IMG/VR virus record: IMGVR_UViG_3300038463_000730
Location: 124,001-188,000 of that record
Direction: 5' to 3' (one strand)
DNA: 64,000 bases
The notes beneath the pieces are model-generated. The model made no database searches. It was not told the DNA's origin and saw nothing but the letters and a program-made list of their open reading frames with translations. Shown in pieces: positions 56,032-64,000 of the stretch. The translations under genes were made by a program, and so were the position numbers. Positions within the stretch are counted from its first letter, which is position 1, and every line of letters begins with the position of its first letter.

Positions 56032-56068
56032 AAAACAGAAAGGGCATCGAATTACTTCGACGCCCTCT
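56032..56068 (-). terminator. Rho-independent terminator after the major capsid gene
   Basis: AGGGCGTCGAA-GTAA-TTCGATGCCCT (11 bp, one G-U, GNRA loop) followed by TTCTGTTTT. Confidence 0.8.
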
Positions 56069-56136
56069 CACTGCCCTTATTCATGACGCCCTAAGGAGCT
56101 GGGCTCGACCGATTAAGGTCAGTATCCTAGTCTAGA

Positions 56137-57153
56137 TTAGACTCCTGGTAGAACAGACTTGCGTCCTGCCGAGACTCCGCGTGGGTTCACGATACCGAGA
56201 CCGATGATCTCGCTCACAACCCATCCTAGCTTCAACTGCTTTGGCTCGTCCGCTGGGAGAACCTCGATGTCCTGACGAACTGGCATAACGCCTACGAACT
56301 CTGGATCCGCTGCCGCGTAAACCGTTCCTGGTGGAACGATCTTGCTGACCATGATGTCAGCTCCCCACAAGTGAGCGTAGAGACCCGTCTGGAGAATCTC
56401 GCGCTGTGTGACTGGATCAACCTCGCCACCGCCTACGCCCTGTCCACCGCCGCTACCCCACTTGAGGATATCTGTGAACTCGTTAATGTTCATGAAGTAC
56501 TTCGTTGTGACCAAGTCCCAACGATCGATCTGCGCCTTCAACTCAAGCAAGTCGCGCTTCAACATACCGGCATCGGTAATGTCCTGTAGCGTGTTCTCAC
56601 CCTGGCTCGCGTTATCGAGTGCCGCGAAGATGTTGGCGTCTTCCTGAGCCATAATCTCCTGACGTGCCTTCTGAACAGCACGGTCGATAACATTGAAACG
56701 ACGACGCTTCACTTCAGCAATACGAACCGTTGGGTTCGCGAAAAGCTCGAACTCTGGAACAACGACGCGGTCTCCGAAGATACGCGACTCTGGTCCTGAA
56801 CCGTTTGAGCTGATTACAACGGCCGCGACATCAATATCGCGATCGTATGTTGGCATTGCTCCCTGTGGAAGTGGGTCAACCACTAGCGCACGACGGGCAA
56901 TTCCATGGTAGTCCAAGTTACGACGAATTGGGTTCGCCATGGCCTGCGCCAAAGCTACTTTTCCGTCCTGGGTTAGGATTGCGCGTGAGATCAAGTCGTC
57001 ACGGCGGTCTTCTGACATCCCAACCTGGCCTGCAAGGCCGATATTTGATGGCTGGTTCTCTTCGAGAATCGCAGCGTACTTCGAGATAACCATCATCGCG
57101 TCTTTCAAAGACGATGCGTTAATCTCTCCCTGTGGTGAAAATAAACTATTCAT
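56137..57153 (-). CDS. Major capsid protein (HK97 fold), 338 aa
   Basis: LAQAMANPIRRNLDYHGIARRALVVDPLPQG, VPEFELFANPTVRIAEVKRRRFNVIDRAVQKARQEIMAQED, G.LWGADIMVSKIVPPGTVY, GWVVSEIIGLGIVNPRGV. Confidence 0.93.
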   Translation of the reverse strand: MNSLFSPQGEINASSLKDAMMVISKYAAILEENQPSNIGLAGQVGMSEDRRDDLISRAILTQDGKVALAQAMANPIRRNLDYHGIARRALVVDPLPQGAMPTYDRDIDVAAVVISSNGSGPESRIFGDRVVVPEFELFANPTVRIAEVKRRRFNVIDRAVQKARQEIMAQEDANIFAALDNASQGENTLQDITDAGMLKRDLLELKAQIDRWDLVTTKYFMNINEFTDILKWGSGGGQGVGGGEVDPVTQREILQTGLYAHLWGADIMVSKIVPPGTVYAAADPEFVGVMPVRQDIEVLPADEPKQLKLGWVVSEIIGLGIVNPRGVSAGRKSVLPGV

Positions 57154-57201: not shown

Positions 57202-57244
57202 AATAAAACAAACAGTTGGGAAAGTCGCCGCTTTCCCAACTGTT
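57202..57244 (-). terminator. Perfect 14-bp hairpin with U-rich tail between decoration and capsid genes
   Basis: AACAGTTGGGAAAG-CGGCGA-CTTTCCCAACTGTT followed by TGTTTTATT on the minus strand. Confidence 0.6.
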
Positions 57245-57257
57245 ATTAGAACGAAAC

Positions 57258-57974
57258 TTAGAAGCTACCCTTCCAGGTAAACACGGCCATATACATCTGG
57301 GCCTGTGCTGCTCCACCGAGTGGTCCCGATGGTGACGCGAATCCAGACACCAACGTGTTAGGAGTCGTGACTAGTGAGCCAGTTGTCTCGAACGTTAGGA
57401 AGCGACCGATGATCGCTGCGCCGTTCGCTGTACCAGCCGATACGTTTGGTGTGAGCAAGCCCGCTGGGGTTGCATACAACGGTGCGCCCGTTGTGATTGT
57501 GCTGTTCGTTGGGACGAGGCCAGTTGTGCTGGTCGTATCAACGTTGTCGAGCGTGACACCGTAGACACCTGGGTTGCCCCATAGTGTTACTTTGCCAGAA
57601 CCGAGCGCCGTGCTTGGTCCGAGGATAGCGCCTGTATAGCTACCTGGAACGTTGAACTGCTGACCGACTGTTCCACCAACGACTGCTCCGAAGAGTGTTC
57701 CGTAGTGAAGGATACCGTCGTCCGTTAGGAAGAAGGGACCGCTGTTGGCCGCTGTTGGCAACGTGATCGTAATAGCTGGACGAACCTTTGTGGTCGTACC
57801 GGCATATCCGTCTTCCTGTACGTCTGCCGCACTGAGGTCTGTTCCGCCGTAAGCAACTGGGGTAACGCCCGTAAAGGTCGCAACCTCTCCACCCTTGATA
57901 GACGACAGCTGTGAATCAAGCATGTCGAACTGTCCGAATGGACTACCATTGTTATTTTGAAGTACTAAAGCCAT
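57258..57974 (-). CDS. Head decoration / cement protein
   Basis: Immediately upstream of the capsid gene; STALGSGKVTLW..PGVY...GAPLYATPAGLLT beta-tulip-like pattern. Confidence 0.7.
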   Translation of the reverse strand: MALVLQNNNGSPFGQFDMLDSQLSSIKGGEVATFTGVTPVAYGGTDLSAADVQEDGYAGTTTKVRPAITITLPTAANSGPFFLTDDGILHYGTLFGAVVGGTVGQQFNVPGSYTGAILGPSTALGSGKVTLWGNPGVYGVTLDNVDTTSTTGLVPTNSTITTGAPLYATPAGLLTPNVSAGTANGAAIIGRFLTFETTGSLVTTPNTLVSGFASPSGPLGGAAQAQMYMAVFTWKGSF

Positions 57975-58089: not shown

Positions 58090-59292
58090 TTAATTTTTGT
58101 TTGGGTGAGGTTTATATCCTTCACCCTTCATCCAATATGCAAGAGCAAATGGGTTATCAAGTTCCTTGTGTTTCTTCATCTTCTCAACCGTCTTGCCCCA
58201 GCCTTTCGGACTGACATCATTTTGGTCAGAAGCAGACGATACATTTGCAGTACGCCCAGCACTAACTTGTTGCAAAATCTTCTCGTATTTATTGACTATT
58301 ACTTTCAATCCATTAAGAATGGTTCTTTCTTTTGAACCGACTTCATATAGAGCTTGTAGTGCGTCGAACTGATCTAATATGTCACTTACATCCTGAGCCT
58401 GAGGAGCATAAACCATATCAGATGCTTTTGTTACAGCCCACCATAGTTCATGCTCTTTGGTACCAGAACTAGTTGATTGAGCAAAAGTTGATTCTTTTAA
58501 TTTTTTAAGCGTTTCGTAAACATTGTTTTCGCGACACCAAGCTGTCCATGCATCCACAGCTGCTAACATCTCATCATCACTTAATGGATTCGAATCACCA
58601 ACGGCCGATACGAACGAACTCTCTTCCGGCGCCGGAACGGTCATTCCCTCAAGAGGGTCTCCAGCTGGATCCCAATCATCATCTTCTGGAGTAAGCTCTG
58701 ATATAAGCTCACGACCCTCATAAGATGGTTCTTTTGATAGTTCGGTCAGCTCTTCGTCTTCGAAATTGGCCAATCTCTGCATACACGAATCCGCAAGAGC
58801 CCGAAGCTCCTCTTCATTCGTATTGTCAAGATGATTACCGACACGAACAAGCTCCATCATCAATGCACGCTGAGCAAGCTTACGATAGTTAGCGTTACCG
58901 GTCGGGTTACGACTTAGTATGTTGATAATGATCTTCTGACGCTCGATGTTGTTCTCTACCAAGCCGTTGATGCGGTCATACGCCGGAGCAATGACGACTG
59001 ACTCAGGGTGAGCCTGTTCCATCATGTTTTTCAGGCCATTTTCGATGTCTTTGTTCGGCTTAACACCATAGAATGCTTCCGGAGCACTGATGTCACCAGT
59101 GTCCCAACGCATCCATGAATCGGCACCGTTGTTCGGGTTGTCGATCACTCCTGGAGTCTTGCTGGTTGCCCCGCCCATGTTTCTCTGAGCAGTCTTAGTC
59201 TGCAACCTGACCTGAGACTCCGGAGCAACGAGGCCCATCTTCTCAGCTACCTTCGCATACTCTTCAAATACTTCGCTTCTACGTTCGCGCAT
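58090..59292 (-). CDS. Putative internal head protein, 400 aa
   Basis: Helical and acidic; AHP...PTG module shared with 61858..63510; basic C-terminal GWGKTVEKMKKHKELDNPFALAYWMK. Confidence 0.6.
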   Translation of the reverse strand: MRERRSEVFEEYAKVAEKMGLVAPESQVRLQTKTAQRNMGGATSKTPGVIDNPNNGADSWMRWDTGDISAPEAFYGVKPNKDIENGLKNMMEQAHPESVVIAPAYDRINGLVENNIERQKIIINILSRNPTGNANYRKLAQRALMMELVRVGNHLDNTNEEELRALADSCMQRLANFEDEELTELSKEPSYEGRELISELTPEDDDWDPAGDPLEGMTVPAPEESSFVSAVGDSNPLSDDEMLAAVDAWTAWCRENNVYETLKKLKESTFAQSTSSGTKEHELWWAVTKASDMVYAPQAQDVSDILDQFDALQALYEVGSKERTILNGLKVIVNKYEKILQQVSAGRTANVSSASDQNDVSPKGWGKTVEKMKKHKELDNPFALAYWMKGEGYKPHPNKN

Positions 59293-59293
59293 G

Positions 59294-60415
59294 TTATTCC
59301 TTCTTTAATGCTGGTTGTTGCGTAGACTGCTGTTCTGGCTCCGGCATCTTACTAGCAACATCTCCAACAAATAAATCAACCAACTCTTTTCTGCTGTTAG
59401 CAGAGTATTGGCCGAATTGATGTGGCATCCATGTGATGGATGGATAGTGATTCTCTGAGTTCTCGCTCTTGATTACGTTAACAATGGTTTTCAACATCGG
59501 TGACGAAGCTAACTGACCACGCTGCGGTCCAAGCTGCGGATAGATCTGAAGCGCCCAATTAACCAACGTGTCACCAATCGTGTTGAGTGGAACATCTTCC
59601 TCCCATATTGCACGCGGGTCCTGGTTTTCCGTGCCGAACCCGGATGGCTTGAGCCAAGCCGGTACTGCTGGTGGTGTCGGAATGGCTGATTGCTGAGCCG
59701 GTTCCCCCGCAGCAGGTTTGGTATCTCCGCTAAACGTCTTCTGGACCAGCTTGCGCTTCACGAACATCGAACATGCGCCCAAAATAGTCTGAAACAACCA
59801 TTTAAAGAAGCGACCAATCCAACCTTTGGCAAGATTCTTACCCATGAGTTTTTCGATAATGCTTTTACCCGGTCCTTCAGCAAGCCATTTGATACCACTT
59901 TGAATTGGCGCTGTTAATGCCGCTTGTTTGATTATCGTTGCCGCGACACCGACACGTTCCCAGGCTTCACGGATCTGATGATCATCTGCGTTTGAACCAC
60001 CAAGATGTTGATCAACAGCTGTCTTGACAGTATTGCTATCAATCGTCCCGCCAGCTCGCAATTTCTCAACAAGTGAGTCCTTGATACTTTTGAAAATTGC
60101 AAACGGCTTTACATTGAAGCCTATTTCGGCGATCAAATCAACCAATGTGATAAACCAACCTCCATAGACACCGATCACGCCTTCAAACGCCAACTCAGCA
60201 AATGCCGCAACCCAATCATCTTTGGCTTTCGCTATTTCATCTGTTACGAACTGCGAGATCGCTCCAGCAACGGTTCCAAGAAATGACGATACCATCTCTG
60301 ACAGATCAGCAGTCTTATGCAGAGGTAAACGGATACGTCCTGCCAACGAATCAGGCATCAAGTACCGATCCATCATCATCGTATCTTCTAGGTATTGTTT
60401 ATCTATGATTGCCAT
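59294..60415 (-). CDS. Putative internal head / ejection protein with hydrophobic helices
   Basis: AAFAELAFEGVIGVYGGWFITLV and GWIGRFFKWLFQTILG segments; KTA and KQA motifs. Confidence 0.55.
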   Translation of the reverse strand: MAIIDKQYLEDTMMMDRYLMPDSLAGRIRLPLHKTADLSEMVSSFLGTVAGAISQFVTDEIAKAKDDWVAAFAELAFEGVIGVYGGWFITLVDLIAEIGFNVKPFAIFKSIKDSLVEKLRAGGTIDSNTVKTAVDQHLGGSNADDHQIREAWERVGVAATIIKQAALTAPIQSGIKWLAEGPGKSIIEKLMGKNLAKGWIGRFFKWLFQTILGACSMFVKRKLVQKTFSGDTKPAAGEPAQQSAIPTPPAVPAWLKPSGFGTENQDPRAIWEEDVPLNTIGDTLVNWALQIYPQLGPQRGQLASSPMLKTIVNVIKSENSENHYPSITWMPHQFGQYSANSRKELVDLFVGDVASKMPEPEQQSTQQPALKKE

Positions 60416-60427
60416 TGATTACCAGCG

Positions 60428-61858
60428 TTAGTATAGTAACTGTGCTATCTTGTTAAATCGCCCAGTCCAAGTGTTTGCAATTTGCTGCTGTTGCGAAATC
60501 ATCGTATTGGTAAGTCCCAATGCTTGCAATATTTGGATTACCAAACTTAATACTTCGTTAATCATGATTGCGCAGTTACGCCCATCAACATCTTGCATGC
60601 CTGACTTCATAACTCGCTCTTTGAAAACGGTTGCAGGGTTGGAACCACCCATGCCACCGGCATCATCTGCATTGATCGTAGTCTTCTTGACCCATGTGTT
60701 ACGAATCTGGTCTAGTTTGTCGCGAGCTTCACCGACCGTCTGGCTTAGTTCGTTAAGTCTGCGTTGAATTACCGGATTGGACTCACCCGGCTTCGTTGCG
60801 GCTTTCGTATTGTAAATAGCAGCTAGATTCTGCACCATTTGATCGTTGTATTTGACCAACCATCCGCCTTCTCCTCCAACGAGGTTGAAGAACTGTTCGA
60901 TTCGGTCCAAATACAACGGATCCCCAAGCGGGGCTCCGCCGATAGCCGAGATAACAGCTTCGGTCATCTTAGTAGATGCGTCGCCTTGACCCTGGTTCTG
61001 GCCCTGGTTACCGCCCTGCTGAGCCGGTTCACCTGATCCGGGCTGTGCCGGTTGGGCTGGTTGTCCTTGCCCCTGACCCGTTCCACCCGCAGCCGTTCCA
61101 GCAGCTTGGTTCGCATTCGGATCCGCATTGAAACGGTTGATCATATCCATGATCTCGCGAATATACTTTTCCATCACTGGAGCAAGTTTCGGAAGGTCCG
61201 CCTTTTTCCAATCCTTTGGAATCTGAACGGCGAAACTGTTTAGTTCTTGATAATTGAACTTACCAGTGTCGATCTTGTATTGGTCAGCCAATCTAAGTAT
61301 CGCCGAGCCAATCTGCGAAGCATAACCTAGTGAGCGATTGGTTTTATCTTCCCACATACCATCGGCTTTCGTCTCATCACCGCGACCTGCGTTTCTGCCG
61401 AGATGGCGCATCTGTTCGATGTATTTCTTACCTTCATCCGACATCAACACGCCAAGAGCATGTGTCTTCTGAACAGCTTGGTTTTCAAGCAGATCTACCA
61501 GTTCGATAATAGCATTTTGCATGCTTACTACCGATGGATTCTTCATTACATTAGTCGCTTCTTGTGGCGAACGATGTTCTGCTCCGGGCGAATTTGGAGC
61601 ATACTCCGGGTCACCGGTTGCAGCATACATATCCGCTCGTTCTTTATCTGCTGGTGTTTGTTGAGCCGGTTGAGCCGGTTGCCCAGTTGGTTTTTGTTCA
61701 AGACCAATCAGATCACTATTGTCCATATTGATCAAATCGCTGTTATCTGTATCAGGCTGTTTGACAACGTCCTGATTTGGCATAAGCTTCTTAGCTGGCG
61801 CAGCCTTCTGTGCTATTGTAACCAGCTCTCGAACTAGTTTATCGCTAAAAACAGACAT
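60428..61858 (-). CDS. Putative internal head protein with degenerate peptidoglycan-binding-like motif
   Basis: SVVSMQNAI...ADGMWEDKTNRSL; Gln/Pro/Gly-rich linkers. Confidence 0.55.
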   Translation of the reverse strand: MSVFSDKLVRELVTIAQKAAPAKKLMPNQDVVKQPDTDNSDLINMDNSDLIGLEQKPTGQPAQPAQQTPADKERADMYAATGDPEYAPNSPGAEHRSPQEATNVMKNPSVVSMQNAIIELVDLLENQAVQKTHALGVLMSDEGKKYIEQMRHLGRNAGRGDETKADGMWEDKTNRSLGYASQIGSAILRLADQYKIDTGKFNYQELNSFAVQIPKDWKKADLPKLAPVMEKYIREIMDMINRFNADPNANQAAGTAAGGTGQGQGQPAQPAQPGSGEPAQQGGNQGQNQGQGDASTKMTEAVISAIGGAPLGDPLYLDRIEQFFNLVGGEGGWLVKYNDQMVQNLAAIYNTKAATKPGESNPVIQRRLNELSQTVGEARDKLDQIRNTWVKKTTINADDAGGMGGSNPATVFKERVMKSGMQDVDGRNCAIMINEVLSLVIQILQALGLTNTMISQQQQIANTWTGRFNKIAQLLY

Positions 61859-63510
61859 TACTTAATCCCGCGCTTTGCTAAAAGCGCCAATATCTTTGTT
61901 TTATTGTCCTCCGGATCACCATTCATCGTGGTAACCTGCCCGGCTTTGATTTTTGCCACAAATGCCTTGGTTTGCTCAAACCACGCAGTAAGTGCTGAGT
62001 CATTCTTTGCTGCAATAGCTGGCGCTTTTGGAAGTATTTCCTTCGTAAACCAATCAGCGAAACCAACTAGTGGACTAGTAGTATTCGATTGTGCTCCAGC
62101 TTCACCGGTCGGACCCGGCCCGACTTTTTCTTTAATTTCACCTAGATACTTAAGAGCCGTATCCTGGTTCTTGCTAAGAACGTTCATTAGATTCTGGGTA
62201 GCTTTCTCTACATCGCCCCAAGCGCCCCATCCACGAAAAACGTTCCCATACTGTTGCGAAATATGTTCCCCAACAATCATATAAATCGAGTTAGCTAGTT
62301 TCCAACCTTCACGACACTTATCAGCTGCATCAACTAGCTGCTGAGCAGTAGAATTGGGTGAAAGATTACATGCCGCCGCGATCCCTGGCAGTTGAGCCTT
62401 CAATTGCTCAACATAAAACCACTGACTACGATCTTCTTTGTTTGGATTGTTGCCTAACTCAGGAGCCTGACCTCTTGTGTCCTTCTGGAATTCCTCTTTT
62501 AGATCTTCCGCTTCAGCTACAACGGCATTACCGGCCGCTTGGATCTTCTCTTGCGAATACCACATGTTCATTAGTAATTGGGTTGACCCTCCACCGAGAA
62601 TGCCACCGATCGCGGCCCCCAATGCCCATGTCCCAAGACCAATGGCAGCAATCGTTGATCCAATTCCTCCCCCTCCGGCCGCAGCTCCACCTCCGGCAGC
62701 GGCAGCACCGGCCCCAGCACCGGCAGCAGCCGGAGTAGTAGCGGCAGCCACACCACTATTCGCAATGAACCAGTCCGCTACTTGCGGAGCACCCCTTTGC
62801 GCGAGCATTTTTAGTACTTGCTCTTCGGCTTCTTTCTGAGCAATGCCTTTGGCCGTGCGACTAGCAATCATTCTCTCGATTTCTTGCATGATCGCACCAG
62901 GATTCTTATCCGGCACGGTCTTCGTGAGTTGGTAAATGGCCTTTACCAGCTGACCCATGATTTTGTCAGCTGCGGGGCCGAAAAAAGGGATAGCAGTTTT
63001 CTGCATTTCCTCCTTCTCTGCCAAGATCGTCTTCAATGCAGCCAATACCATTGTCTTCGACGCTAGTTTGCCGGTCGGTTCTTTCTCTACGACGTCTTTG
63101 ATCATTTTGTGTTGATCAAGTTTGTCTTCAACGACGCCAAGCTTGTCATGAGCCTCAGCCATTTCGACCGAACCAGCAGGGTGAGCGAATTCAAGCAGAG
63201 CTTCTCCGGTCTCCCCGTCCGTACCGTACATACGTACATAGTTCTGAGCCCTGACGTTCATGCGGAACTTCTCTTCCACACGCTCTGCCTCGGCAACGAG
63301 CCCCTTTACACGTAAGCCGAAACACAAACGAAGGATATCCTGGTTTAGGTTATCCGATGGAGCCAAACTAACATGACGTGGTGCCCTGGATAGGTTCCGC
63401 GCGGCTCGTTCTAGTCCGGATTCCTCTTTGATTAAATTCTTTTCTTTGGCGAGTTTGGTAAATTGCTGCATTACCTCACTCTGGCTTTCTGAAATGTGCT
63501 TATAAGTCAT
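61858..63510 (-). CDS. Putative internal head / ejection protein with glycine-zipper segment
   Basis: ATG at 63510 with GGAG ribosome-binding site (ORF track start 63534); GIGSTIAAIGLGTWALGAAIGGILGGG. Confidence 0.6.
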   Translation of the reverse strand: MTYKHISESQSEVMQQFTKLAKEKNLIKEESGLERAARNLSRAPRHVSLAPSDNLNQDILRLCFGLRVKGLVAEAERVEEKFRMNVRAQNYVRMYGTDGETGEALLEFAHPAGSVEMAEAHDKLGVVEDKLDQHKMIKDVVEKEPTGKLASKTMVLAALKTILAEKEEMQKTAIPFFGPAADKIMGQLVKAIYQLTKTVPDKNPGAIMQEIERMIASRTAKGIAQKEAEEQVLKMLAQRGAPQVADWFIANSGVAAATTPAAAGAGAGAAAAGGGAAAGGGGIGSTIAAIGLGTWALGAAIGGILGGGSTQLLMNMWYSQEKIQAAGNAVVAEAEDLKEEFQKDTRGQAPELGNNPNKEDRSQWFYVEQLKAQLPGIAAACNLSPNSTAQQLVDAADKCREGWKLANSIYMIVGEHISQQYGNVFRGWGAWGDVEKATQNLMNVLSKNQDTALKYLGEIKEKVGPGPTGEAGAQSNTTSPLVGFADWFTKEILPKAPAIAAKNDSALTAWFEQTKAFVAKIKAGQVTTMNGDPEDNKTKILALLAKRGIK

Positions 63511-63593: not shown

Positions 63594-63956
63594 TTACTTG
63601 GCATTTTCACGCCGTATGCGAAGAATCACCTTCTCAGTTACTCCAAAATCTTTACCTACCTTACCGGCACCTCTTGGATCTGTCATGATTTGTTTAATCT
63701 GTTCATCGGTGAATACATGTTTGTTCGACGGTGCCTGTCCGATCGTGCGATGTGGAGGTAATGTTTCGAGCGTTCCGTTGCGCTTTAGACGCTGTCCATG
63801 CTTCATGCAATATAGTTCACCTTGGTATCTTAGATAATCCCGACCTCCACCAACCACATCACAATCAGGCGCATGGCACTTTCGCTTGCCTTCTGCAATT
63901 TCTTTCTCATGACGTTGTTTGGTTGTCTCTGCGATTGACTGAATACGTTTTCCCAC
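63594..63956 (-). CDS. Small DNA-binding protein (HNH-associated zinc finger plus HTH-like C-terminus)
   Basis: CHAPDC...LYCMKHGQRLKRNG and FTDEQIKQI...VGKDFGVTEKVILRIR; no HNH catalytic motif visible. Confidence 0.55.
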   Translation of the reverse strand: MGKRIQSIAETTKQRHEKEIAEGKRKCHAPDCDVVGGGRDYLRYQGELYCMKHGQRLKRNGTLETLPPHRTIGQAPSNKHVFTDEQIKQIMTDPRGAGKVGKDFGVTEKVILRIRRENAK

Positions 63957-64000
63957 AGTTTCTTCTGATTGAATACGACCGGTAAATACTTCTGAGAACT

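What the first reader, a model, noticed from the sequence alone, without database searches (positions are those of the whole stretch)
58090..63510. Shared N-terminal module in two otherwise different head-region proteins
58090..59292 has SEVFEEYAKVAEKMGLV...EQAHPESVVIAPAYDRINGLVENNIERQKIIINILSRNPTG...KLA. 61858..63510 has SEVMQQFTKLAKEKNLI...EFAHPAGSVEMAEAHDKLGVVEDKLDQHKMIKDVVEKEPTGKLA. A conserved AHP..D..G.VE..PTG module ending in KLA and followed by unrelated C-termini looks like a cleavable capsid-targeting or scaffolding prodomain carrying different cargo.
Basis: partly seen in the sequence, partly recalled or inferred. Interest (0 to 1): 0.6.

Follow-up and report, generated by a model that had tools for sequence, protein, structure and literature searches.

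The report
Shared N-terminal module, huge-phage head proteins
Two neighbouring head-region proteins of a 435-kb peat phage share a real, strongly conserved 150-175-residue N-terminal module that marks a large unannotated protein family of huge phages, and it is probably the part that brings both proteins into the assembling head, though neither that nor its removal has been tested.

Summary
P0001 (58090-59292, minus strand) and P0002 (61858-63510, minus strand) share an N-terminal module. The evidence is BLASTP E 5e-7, a family HMM at E 3.6e-11, and a profile-profile comparison at 98.7% probability and E 2.6e-16 over 128 columns. The module does not stop at 'KLA'. It spans about residues 1-175 of P0001 and 1-165 of P0002.

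The two proteins belong to two ancient paralogous families, A (P0001-like) and B (P0002-like). These genes bracket a tightly packed cassette, B-M1-M2-M3-A, which lies between a prohead-protease fusion gene and the major capsid gene. All 49 related viral contigs with enough flanking DNA carry exactly one B and one A.

A profile search found 1,784 cluster representatives. In nearly all of the 150 listed hits the module begins at residue 1. There is no Pfam, PHROG, PDB or isolate-phage match.

The module is three to four times more conserved than the C-terminal regions, which differ between A and B and have sometimes been replaced, as in both window proteins. AlphaFold models show no compact fold.

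The best reading is a head-incorporation or assembly module, possibly trimmed by the prohead protease. Cleavage, targeting and virion association remain untested.

The parts
58090..59292 (-). P0001, the family-A protein (400 aa). It has the N-terminal module, an acidic linker, a helical region and a basic C-terminal tail.
58768..59292 (-). Module in P0001, about residues 1-175. Its elements in order are helix 7-18, a variable linker, a conserved core, helix 115-127, a P-x-G turn and a helical hairpin at 136-177.
58927..59076 (-). Most conserved core of the module in P0001 (residues 73-122). It holds Y75, the invariant A94-H95 with P96, and L-V-E113-N. Mean column identity across the family is about 73%.
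58105..58215 (-). C-terminal basic tail motif of P0001 (residues about 360-396). It recurs at 64-86% identity in otherwise unrelated phage proteins that lack the module.
61858..63510 (-). P0002, the family-B protein (550 aa from ATG 63510). It has the N-terminal module, a variable region, a Gly/Ala-rich hydrophobic segment and a C-terminal domain.
63016..63510 (-). Module in P0002, about residues 1-165. It holds the invariant A109-H110, P111, V-E128 and the P145-T-G-K-L-A150 motif.
62551..62745 (-). Gly/Ala-rich (58%) hydrophobic, glycine-zipper-like segment of P0002.
60428..61858 (-). P0003 (476 aa), a member of the M1/M2 family of the cassette. It has no module. Its start overlaps the stop codon of P0002.
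59294..60415 (-). P0004 (373 aa), a member of the M3 family of the cassette. It has no module and ends 1 nt before the start of P0001.
57258..57974 (-). Conserved 238-aa protein between A and the capsid gene. It occupies the position of phage G's decoration gene, but no homology to that gene was detected.
56137..57153 (-). Major capsid protein (338 aa). It is 52% identical to phage G gp27 and has a conserved 45-residue N-terminal extension.

Best explanation
**What the two proteins are.** P0001 (family A) and P0002 (family B) are the two ancient paralogues of an unannotated protein family. The family is confined to a clade of huge phages with contigs of 350-500 kb. This phage is from peat. Their capsid protein is related to that of Bacillus phage G.

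**The shared part.** The constant part is the N-terminal 150-175 residues. It consists of, in order:
- an amphipathic helix;
- a linker of variable length;
- an extended, very conserved core of the form L-Y ... hydrophobic-x-E/D-x-A-H-P ... V-E;
- a helix, a P-x-G turn and a long helix.

**Gene context.** The two genes bracket a co-oriented, tightly packed cassette, B-M1-M2-M3-A. In this window the cassette is B-M-M-A. It lies between a gene for a 1,140-aa prohead-protease fusion and the genes for a conserved 238-aa protein and the major capsid protein.

**Most likely mechanism.** The module probably docks both proteins onto one common, highly conserved site inside the assembling prohead. That site could be the shell, the core/scaffold or the protease. 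The differing C-terminal regions would then act as scaffold-like, internal or ejected head proteins. The module may afterwards be cut by the prohead protease at its conserved hydrophobic-x-Glu sites.

**Shown:** homology, N-terminal position, strong conservation, synteny, differing C-termini and the lack of a compact fold.

**Inferred:** head incorporation, the binding partner and cleavage.
For: **Homology.** all support it.

**Family size and position of the module.** 1,784 representatives scored at E<=1e-3 and 622 at E<=1e-30. In nearly all of the 150 listed hits the module begins at residue 1.

**Synteny.**
- All 49 viral loci with at least 6.5 kb upstream of A carry exactly one B, 3.6-5.5 kb upstream.
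- The layout B-M1-M2-M3-A recurs across loci.
- B+M1 fusion proteins of about 1,080 aa exist in some loci.

**Head context.**
- The capsid protein matches phrog_2522 at 1.7e-73.
- The protease domain matches phrog_18299 at 1.3e-15 and phage G gp19 at 5e-28.
- A portal gene lies upstream.
- No terminator-like hairpin lies between B and A on the coding strand.

**Conservation.** Mean column identity is 45-73% in the module, against 8-30% in the C-terminal regions.

**C-terminal regions.** They are unrelated between A and B and have been replaced in some lineages, including both window proteins.

**Structure.** The models have mean pLDDT of about 70 and pTM of 0.32-0.35, with the same order of secondary-structure elements in A and B. 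No structural match was found.

**Precedent.** T4 internal proteins carry an N-terminal capsid-targeting sequence. SPN3US paralogues gp53 and gp54 carry N-terminal propeptides of 125 and 137 residues that the prohead protease cuts several times (PMC5694885, PMC10052503).
Against: - There is no direct evidence that either protein is in proheads or virions. No cultured phage carries the module.
- No conserved acidic residue marks the boundary between the module and the C-terminus in family A. Conserved hydrophobic-x-E/D sites are just as common in any conserved protein, such as the capsid protein, so they discriminate nothing.
- The protease's family and specificity are not established. It has no Pfam match.
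- A module of 150-175 residues conserved this strongly could equally be a retained functional domain.
- 54 of 69 A proteins have a transmembrane-like helix directly after the module. This is not typical of scaffold proteins.
- The single complex prediction, capsid protein plus module, gave no answer.
Confidence: 0.45

Rival explanations
1. The module is a retained oligomerisation or structural domain. A and B would be two subunits of one scaffold, core or inner-body-like structure that co-assemble through the shared N-terminal domain. The domain would be the working part rather than a removable tag.
For: - The module is the best conserved part of both proteins.
- It contains confidently predicted helical hairpins, with pLDDT of 90 or more.
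- Exactly one A and one B occur per genome, which suggests a fixed stoichiometric pair.
- Most A proteins, and most B proteins, keep their own family-typical C-terminus.
- The C-terminal halves of A proteins resemble long helical bundles or coiled coils, with profile hits against PDB at E of about 1e-4.
Against: - No homo- or hetero-oligomer was tested.
- The conserved core around A-H-P ... V-E is predicted to be extended with low confidence, which fits docking onto another protein better than self-association.
- C-termini have been replaced in several lineages while the module was kept.
Confidence: 0.3
2. The proteins are not internal head proteins. They would be membrane-associated assembly or infection factors, for example anchoring the prohead initiator at the inner membrane. 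The hydrophobic helix after the module would act as a true membrane anchor.
For: - 54 of 69 family-A proteins have a hydrophobic stretch of 19-30 residues directly after the module.
- P0002 has a Gly/Ala-rich glycine-zipper-like segment.
- T4 proheads start on a membrane-bound initiator (established knowledge, summarised in PMC5694885).
Against: - P0001 itself lacks the hydrophobic helix, as do most B proteins.
- The gene position between protease and capsid genes is typical of scaffold or core genes.
- Hydrophobic glycine-rich segments are also common in packaged ejection proteins.
Confidence: 0.12
3. The module is a small enzyme or a metal- or cofactor-binding domain. It would use the invariant His and the near-invariant Glu and Asp.
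For: A-H is invariant, and P96, E113 and D106 are nearly invariant, across 57-149 sequences.
Against: - There is no compact predicted fold (pTM 0.32-0.35) even with alignments of 57 and 149 sequences.
- There is no Pfam, PDB or Foldseek match.
- The conserved residues lie in a low-confidence extended segment.
Confidence: 0.06
4. The similarity is due to chance or to compositional bias.
For: Pairwise identity is only 32% over 62 residues.
Against: - Reciprocal profile searches and profile-profile comparison are highly significant.
- The paired arrangement is conserved in all 49 informative loci.
Confidence: 0.01

Closest known systems
Capsid targeting sequence (CTS) of phage T4 internal proteins IPI-III and Alt
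   Same: It is an N-terminal element shared by otherwise different head proteins. It directs them into the prohead core and is then removed by the prohead protease (PMC5694885, PMC10052503, citing Mullaney and Black 1996).
   Different: The T4 CTS is about 10-20 residues long and ends at a defined L/I-x-E cleavage site. The module here is 150-175 residues, has several conserved blocks and helices, shows no sequence relation to the CTS, and has no demonstrated cleavage or targeting.
Paralog family A of phiKZ-like giant phages (SPN3US gp53/gp54; phiKZ gp93, 94, 95, 162, 163; Pfam PF12699)
   Same: These are paralogous, abundant internal or ejection head proteins of jumbo phages. They carry long N-terminal propeptides (125 and 137 residues in SPN3US) whose extreme N-termini are more conserved than the rest and which the prohead protease cuts at several sites (PMC5694885, PMC10052503).
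   Different: There is no sequence relation, and PF12699 is not hit. In that family the whole proteins are paralogous. Here only the N-terminal module is shared and the C-termini are unrelated. The phage clade is also different, with a phage-G-type capsid protein.
Scaffolding proteins and protease/scaffold pairs that share a targeting domain (lambda C/Nu3; the C-terminal tail of the HK97 protease; the coat-binding helix-turn-helix of P22 gp8)
   Same: The genes lie between the protease and capsid genes. The proteins are largely helical and not globular. Two different head-assembly proteins carry a common segment that brings them to the same place (my own knowledge of these systems, not tested here).
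   Different: In those systems the shared or coat-binding part is C-terminal. No sequence or profile relation was found to the likely scaffold genes of phage G, Tunturi_5 or LR745208.
N-terminal cargo-loading domains of family 2 encapsulins
   Same: These are long, largely disordered N-terminal domains with short conserved motifs that load different cargo proteins into an HK97-fold shell (my own knowledge, a functional analogy only).
   Different: That is a bacterial nanocompartment, not a virus. There is no sequence relation, and nothing was tested here.

Membership tests
T4-type capsid targeting sequence | A short (about 10-20 aa) N-terminal peptide | tested here: not met
   The module spans about 150-175 residues with several conserved blocks.
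T4-type capsid targeting sequence | Ends at a prohead-protease cleavage site (L/I-x-E) that is cut during maturation | tested here: inconclusive
   Conserved hydrophobic-x-E/D sites lie inside the module (I-M-E92, L-V-E113 in A; L-L-E, V-V-E in B). None lies at the module boundary in family A, and such sites are equally common in the capsid protein. Cleavage itself cannot be tested with these tools.
T4-type capsid targeting sequence | Sufficient to carry a foreign protein into the prohead | not testable with these tools
   This needs an expression or packaging experiment.
phiKZ_IP / Pfam PF12699 (SPN3US gp53/54, phiKZ inner-body proteins) | Sequence match to PF12699 | tested here: not met
   The Pfam scan of P0001-P0004 at E<=0.1 gave no PF12699 hit. 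tblastn against 50,697 phage records gave no match.
phiKZ_IP / Pfam PF12699 (SPN3US gp53/54, phiKZ inner-body proteins) | Present in virions as processed C-terminal fragments | not testable with these tools
   No cultured member or proteome exists for this clade.
Phage scaffolding protein | Gene between the prohead protease and major capsid genes | tested here: met
   The gene order is protease fusion (L006:3695-7117), B, M, M, A, a 238-aa protein, then the capsid protein.
Phage scaffolding protein | Elongated helical or coiled-coil protein without a compact fold | tested here: inconclusive
   The module models have pTM 0.32-0.35 and are mostly helices plus extended segments. The C-terminal halves of A homologues give weak coiled-coil or helical-bundle hits in PDB. 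Atlas models of the whole proteins have pLDDT 0.41-0.47.
Phage scaffolding protein | Sequence or profile relation to a known scaffold family, or to the scaffold-position genes of relatives | tested here: not met
   There are no Pfam or PHROG hits. hhalign against phage G gp21, Tunturi_5 gp332 and the LR745208 508-aa ORF gave probabilities of 1.5% or less.
Phage scaffolding protein | Present in proheads and absent from mature virions | not testable with these tools
   This needs particle proteomics.

The most novel reading that the evidence does not exclude
The module would be a new capsid-loading domain specific to huge phages, roughly ten times longer than the T4 capsid targeting sequence. 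It would dock onto a conserved site inside the prohead and would be sufficient to load different payloads. These would include membrane-active ejection proteins. The module would then be degraded by the prohead protease. The obligatory A/B pair would nucleate an internal core or inner-body-like structure in capsids that hold 350-500 kb of DNA.
Probability: 0.25. Interest if true: 0.7.

Novelty: new variant of a known kind. Interest (0 to 1): 0.5.

Why it matters
How capsids that hold 350-500 kb of DNA are built and filled with proteins is known only for the phiKZ/SPN3US group and for T4. The module defines a large family (at least 1,784 clusters at 50% identity) that has no name in Pfam, PHROGs or any annotated phage. 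It also marks a conserved five-gene head cassette in an uncultured clade of huge phages.

If it is a loading domain, it would give three things:
- a direct handle for annotating internal and ejected proteins in metagenomic huge phages;
- a testable model for core assembly in phage-G-type capsids;
- a possible tag for packaging proteins into very large phage heads.

If it is instead a retained scaffold domain, it still names the likely scaffold or core genes of this clade.

Tried and rejected
**Searches and predictions that found nothing useful**
- Complex prediction of the capsid protein (alignment A3) with the module (A2) gave no answer, with a score of 0.01. This is evidence neither for nor against binding.
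- Foldseek against PDB found nothing at E<=0.001.
- Foldseek against BFVD found only an uncharacterised family member, A0A6J5RU48 (E 1.7e-9). The next hit, A0A6J5RM37 (E 0.36), may be the A-type paralogue.
- VIA-align against 48,161 PDB chains found only generic helical hairpins, with Z of 6.4 or less, over residues 47-96 of B.
- The ESM Atlas gave no usable hit.
- The profile search against PDB sequences gave only coiled-coil noise on the C-terminal halves.
- Pfam and PHROG scans of all cassette proteins, and of ten long B proteins, found nothing.

**Ideas tested and dropped**
- A short N-terminal signal shared with the other cassette proteins. An HMM of helix 1 alone ranked P0003 third in the genome (E 0.17). 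Across 80 loci, however, the M1, M2, M3 and capsid families show no enrichment, so this is chance.
- Conserved hydrophobic-x-E/D sites as markers of cleavage. They are not discriminating.
- Homology of the cassette proteins to the scaffold-position genes of phage G, Tunturi_5 and LR745208. None was found.
- Homology of the 238-aa protein to the phage G decoration protein gp26. None was found.

**Host and naming searches**
- A search for a host by looking for the A-core motif in 185,579 prokaryote genomes gave no match.
- Cluster look-ups gave no names.

**Read data**
- Two short contigs from one peat RNA library are identical to parts of P0001 and P0004. The tool warns that DNA may be present in such a library, so this is not counted as proof of transcription.


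Full report
**1. What is there**

The window is bases 124001-188000 of a 434,688-bp IMG/VR virus record. The region of the finding lies on the minus strand, in a run of closely packed genes:

| Gene | Coordinates | Length | Note |
|---|---|---|---|
| P0002 | 61858-63510 | 550 aa | |
| P0003 | 60428-61858 | 476 aa | start overlaps the P0002 stop |
| P0004 | 59294-60415 | 373 aa | |
| P0001 | 58090-59292 | 400 aa | starts 1 nt after P0004 ends |
| conserved 238-aa protein | 57258-57974 | 238 aa | |
| major capsid protein | 56137-57153 | 338 aa | |

- The capsid protein matches phrog_2522 at 1.7e-73 and is 52% identical to Bacillus phage G gp27.
- Upstream in the genome lie a GIY-YIG homing endonuclease, three small genes, a 1,140-aa protein and a portal gene.
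- The N-terminal part of the 1,140-aa protein matches a head maturation protease (phrog_18299, 1.3e-15). It is 36% identical to phage G gp19.
- Downstream lie tail genes, including a sheath gene and a fibre-like gene.
- The two proteins therefore sit between the prohead protease and capsid genes, which is where scaffold and core genes usually lie.
- On the coding strand the scan reports no terminator-like hairpin in the gaps between the four genes. Its only hit within the block (58321-58338) lies inside P0001 and has a 5-bp stem. Strong hairpins flank the capsid gene.

**2.

The quoted peptides are present. The similarity is well above chance:

- BLASTP gives E 5e-7.
- The N-terminal 175 residues of P0001 have more than 55 metagenomic homologues whose C-terminal parts do not align with P0001.
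- An HMM of those N-termini finds P0002 residues 17-162 at E 3.6e-11, and nothing else among 3,350 ORFs of the genome.
- hhalign of the two family alignments gives 98.7% probability and E 2.6e-16 over 128 columns, starting at the N-terminus.

ATG 63510 is the correct start for P0002.

It begins with an amphipathic helix at the N-terminus. It runs past the P-T-G-K-L-A motif by about 15-20 residues in P0002, and by about 40 residues in P0001, up to a conserved LADSC helix.

**3. Two families, one cassette**

A scan of IMG/VR returned 80 related loci, many on contigs of 350-470 kb.

- Each locus has one P0001-like gene (family A).
- With a second HMM built from the upstream copies, every one of the 49 loci with at least 6.5 kb upstream of A has exactly one P0002-like gene (family B). 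It lies 3.6-5.5 kb upstream.
- The usual order is B-M1-M2-M3-A.
- M1 and M2 are paralogues of each other and include P0003. M3 includes P0004. None of them carries the module.
- In a few loci, B is a protein of about 1,080 aa whose later part matches the M1 profile. This is a gene fusion that ties B functionally to the cassette.
- The capsid protein of these phages is 71-87% identical to the window's.
- The module was not detected in the capsid-gene regions of phage G, Tunturi_5 and LR745208.
- P0001 and P0002 have no tblastn match in 50,697 deposited phage genomes.
- The A-core motif has no match in 185,579 prokaryote genomes.
- A profile search of 1.84 billion cluster representatives found 1,784 proteins at E<=1e-3 and 622 at E<=1e-30. 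Among the 150 listed hits, lengths are mostly 360-650 aa and the module starts at residue 1 in nearly all.
- No member has a name.

**4. Anatomy**

- The residue pair A-H (A94-H95 in P0001, A109-H110 in P0002) is invariant across both families.
- S6, Y75, P96, E113 and G132 (P0001 numbering) are nearly invariant.
- Mean column identity is 45-73% in the module, against 8-30% in the rest of the proteins.
- AlphaFold models of the A module (57 sequences) and the B module (149 sequences) have mean pLDDT of 70 and 72 and pTM of 0.32 and 0.35.
- Both models show the same order of elements: an N-terminal helix, a linker, a short helix before A-H-P, two tiny strands across the A-H-P ... V-E stretch, a helix, the P-x-G turn and a long helix.
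- B has an extra, confidently predicted helical hairpin in the linker. Two representatives have a 115-residue insertion at the same place.
- No known fold matches.
- This pattern fits a segment that takes up its structure on a partner, rather than a free-standing domain.

**5. The C-terminal parts**

- Full-length profiles of A and B align only in the N-terminal part.
- 54 of 64 A proteins share one C-terminal region. 54 of 69 have a transmembrane-like hydrophobic helix directly after the module.
- In the 80 loci the B C-termini fall into many BLAST clusters. Among the top 150 representatives, however, 128 of 147 are linked by single-linkage BLAST clustering.
- Both window proteins are atypical.
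- P0001 has lost the hydrophobic helix. Instead it carries an acidic linker (pI 4.05), a helical part and a basic tail. Its C-terminal region is a singleton among the loci.
- P0002 belongs to a nine-member C-terminal cluster and has a Gly/Ala-rich hydrophobic segment.
- The accurate picture is therefore two paralogous families with a common N-terminal domain and occasional C-terminal replacement. It is not a universal tag attached to arbitrary cargo.

**6. Mechanism**

The best-supported reading is that the module is the part through which both proteins enter or organise the prohead interior. Five observations support it:

- the gene position;
- the lack of a compact fold;
- a conservation level close to that of the capsid protein;
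- the fixed A/B pairing;
- the precedents in T4 and in SPN3US/phiKZ.

On the precedents: different or paralogous head proteins in those phages share conserved N-terminal propeptides, which target them to the core and are then cut by the prohead protease, in SPN3US at several sites within propeptides of 125 and 137 residues (PMC5694885, PMC10052503).

Both families keep a hydrophobic-x-E/D just before A-H-P and a V-E about 20 residues later. This would fit a Glu-specific T4-gp21-like protease. Such sites are too common to count as evidence, though. The protease's family is known only through a PHROG match and BLAST hits to annotated proteases.

Cleavage, the binding partner and virion association are inferences. 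The retained-domain rival, in which A and B co-assemble through the module, is nearly as likely.

**7. Comparison and novelty**

The module is not a member of PF12699 or of any Pfam or PHROG family. At 150-175 residues it is not a T4-type capsid targeting sequence. It works, at most, like those elements. I rate it a new variant of a known kind: a new, large, clade-specific N-terminal module family in head-assembly proteins of huge phages.

**8. Habitat**

Identical sequence occurs in contigs of peat metagenomes from several studies. One peat RNA library holds two short identical contigs, which does not prove transcription.

Noticed in passing
window 58105-58215 (-), P0001 residues about 360-396; also P0062, P0063, P0064 and L089:8001-8864: A basic motif of 35-40 residues (S-P-K-G-W ... 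D-N-P-F-A-L-A-Y-W-M-K ... G-Y-x-P) at the C-terminus of P0001 recurs at 64-86% identity in otherwise unrelated metagenomic phage proteins that lack the module. In P0063 it is N-terminal, and the gene lies 5 kb downstream of an HK97-type capsid gene. It looks like a second small mobile element. From memory only, it resembles a scaffold-type coat-binding helix-turn-helix.
   Followed up: partly
L006:3695-7117 (-) = G000 190695-194117: This 1,140-aa protein has a prohead-protease domain at about residues 100-250. It is followed by a long, low-complexity, partly helical extension that contains two copies of a repeat of about 38 residues (Y-F-Q-G-A-G-G-V-N-E-P ...). It may be a protease-scaffold fusion. 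The homologue in L004 is 1,129 aa.
   Followed up: partly
window 63594-64000 (-), continuing to G000 188475 (L006:594-1475): A GIY-YIG homing endonuclease gene (293 aa) is inserted in the head gene cluster just upstream of P0002. A homologue occupies the same position in the related phage L004.
   Followed up: partly
L006:8051-9262 (-): A 403-aa protein with a dual-specificity or tyrosine phosphatase domain (PF13350, PF03162, PF22784) lies between the portal and protease genes.
   Followed up: no
window 56137-57153 (-), residues 1-48 of the capsid protein: The capsid protein has a 45-residue N-terminal extension that the annotated phage G gp27 lacks. It is almost as conserved as the rest of the protein. 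It carries conserved hydrophobic-x-E/D sites at residues 31/32 and 48, the latter exactly where the alignment to phage G gp27 begins. It may be a propeptide.
   Followed up: partly
window 57211-57244 (-) and 56038-56069 (-): Two strong 14-bp stem-loops with T-runs flank the capsid gene. One lies between the 238-aa gene and the capsid gene, and one lies after the capsid gene. They may act as an attenuator and a terminator, or as RNA-stabilising hairpins.
   Followed up: no
L045:2115-5375, L072:1877-5110, L079:5619-8927, L080:5702-8917: In some related phages the B protein is about 1,080 aa and its later part matches the M1 family profile. This looks like a B+M1 gene fusion. Those loci have only one gene between B and A.
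   Followed up: partly
proteins P0199 and P0203: Two B-family representatives have an insertion of about 115 residues between the N-terminal helix and the rest of the module. This shows that the linker tolerates large insertions.
   Followed up: no
whole record G000; runs X1-X12: The phage occurs with identical sequence in peat metagenomes from several independent studies. The same protein also lies on a 502,994-bp contig. IMG/VR labels the record 'provirus', yet the module motif is absent from 185,579 prokaryote genomes.
   Followed up: partly
protein P0108: A 2,783-aa repetitive protein scored high in the profile search through 21 weak repeated matches to module positions 38-77. This is most likely a low-complexity false positive.
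   Followed up: no
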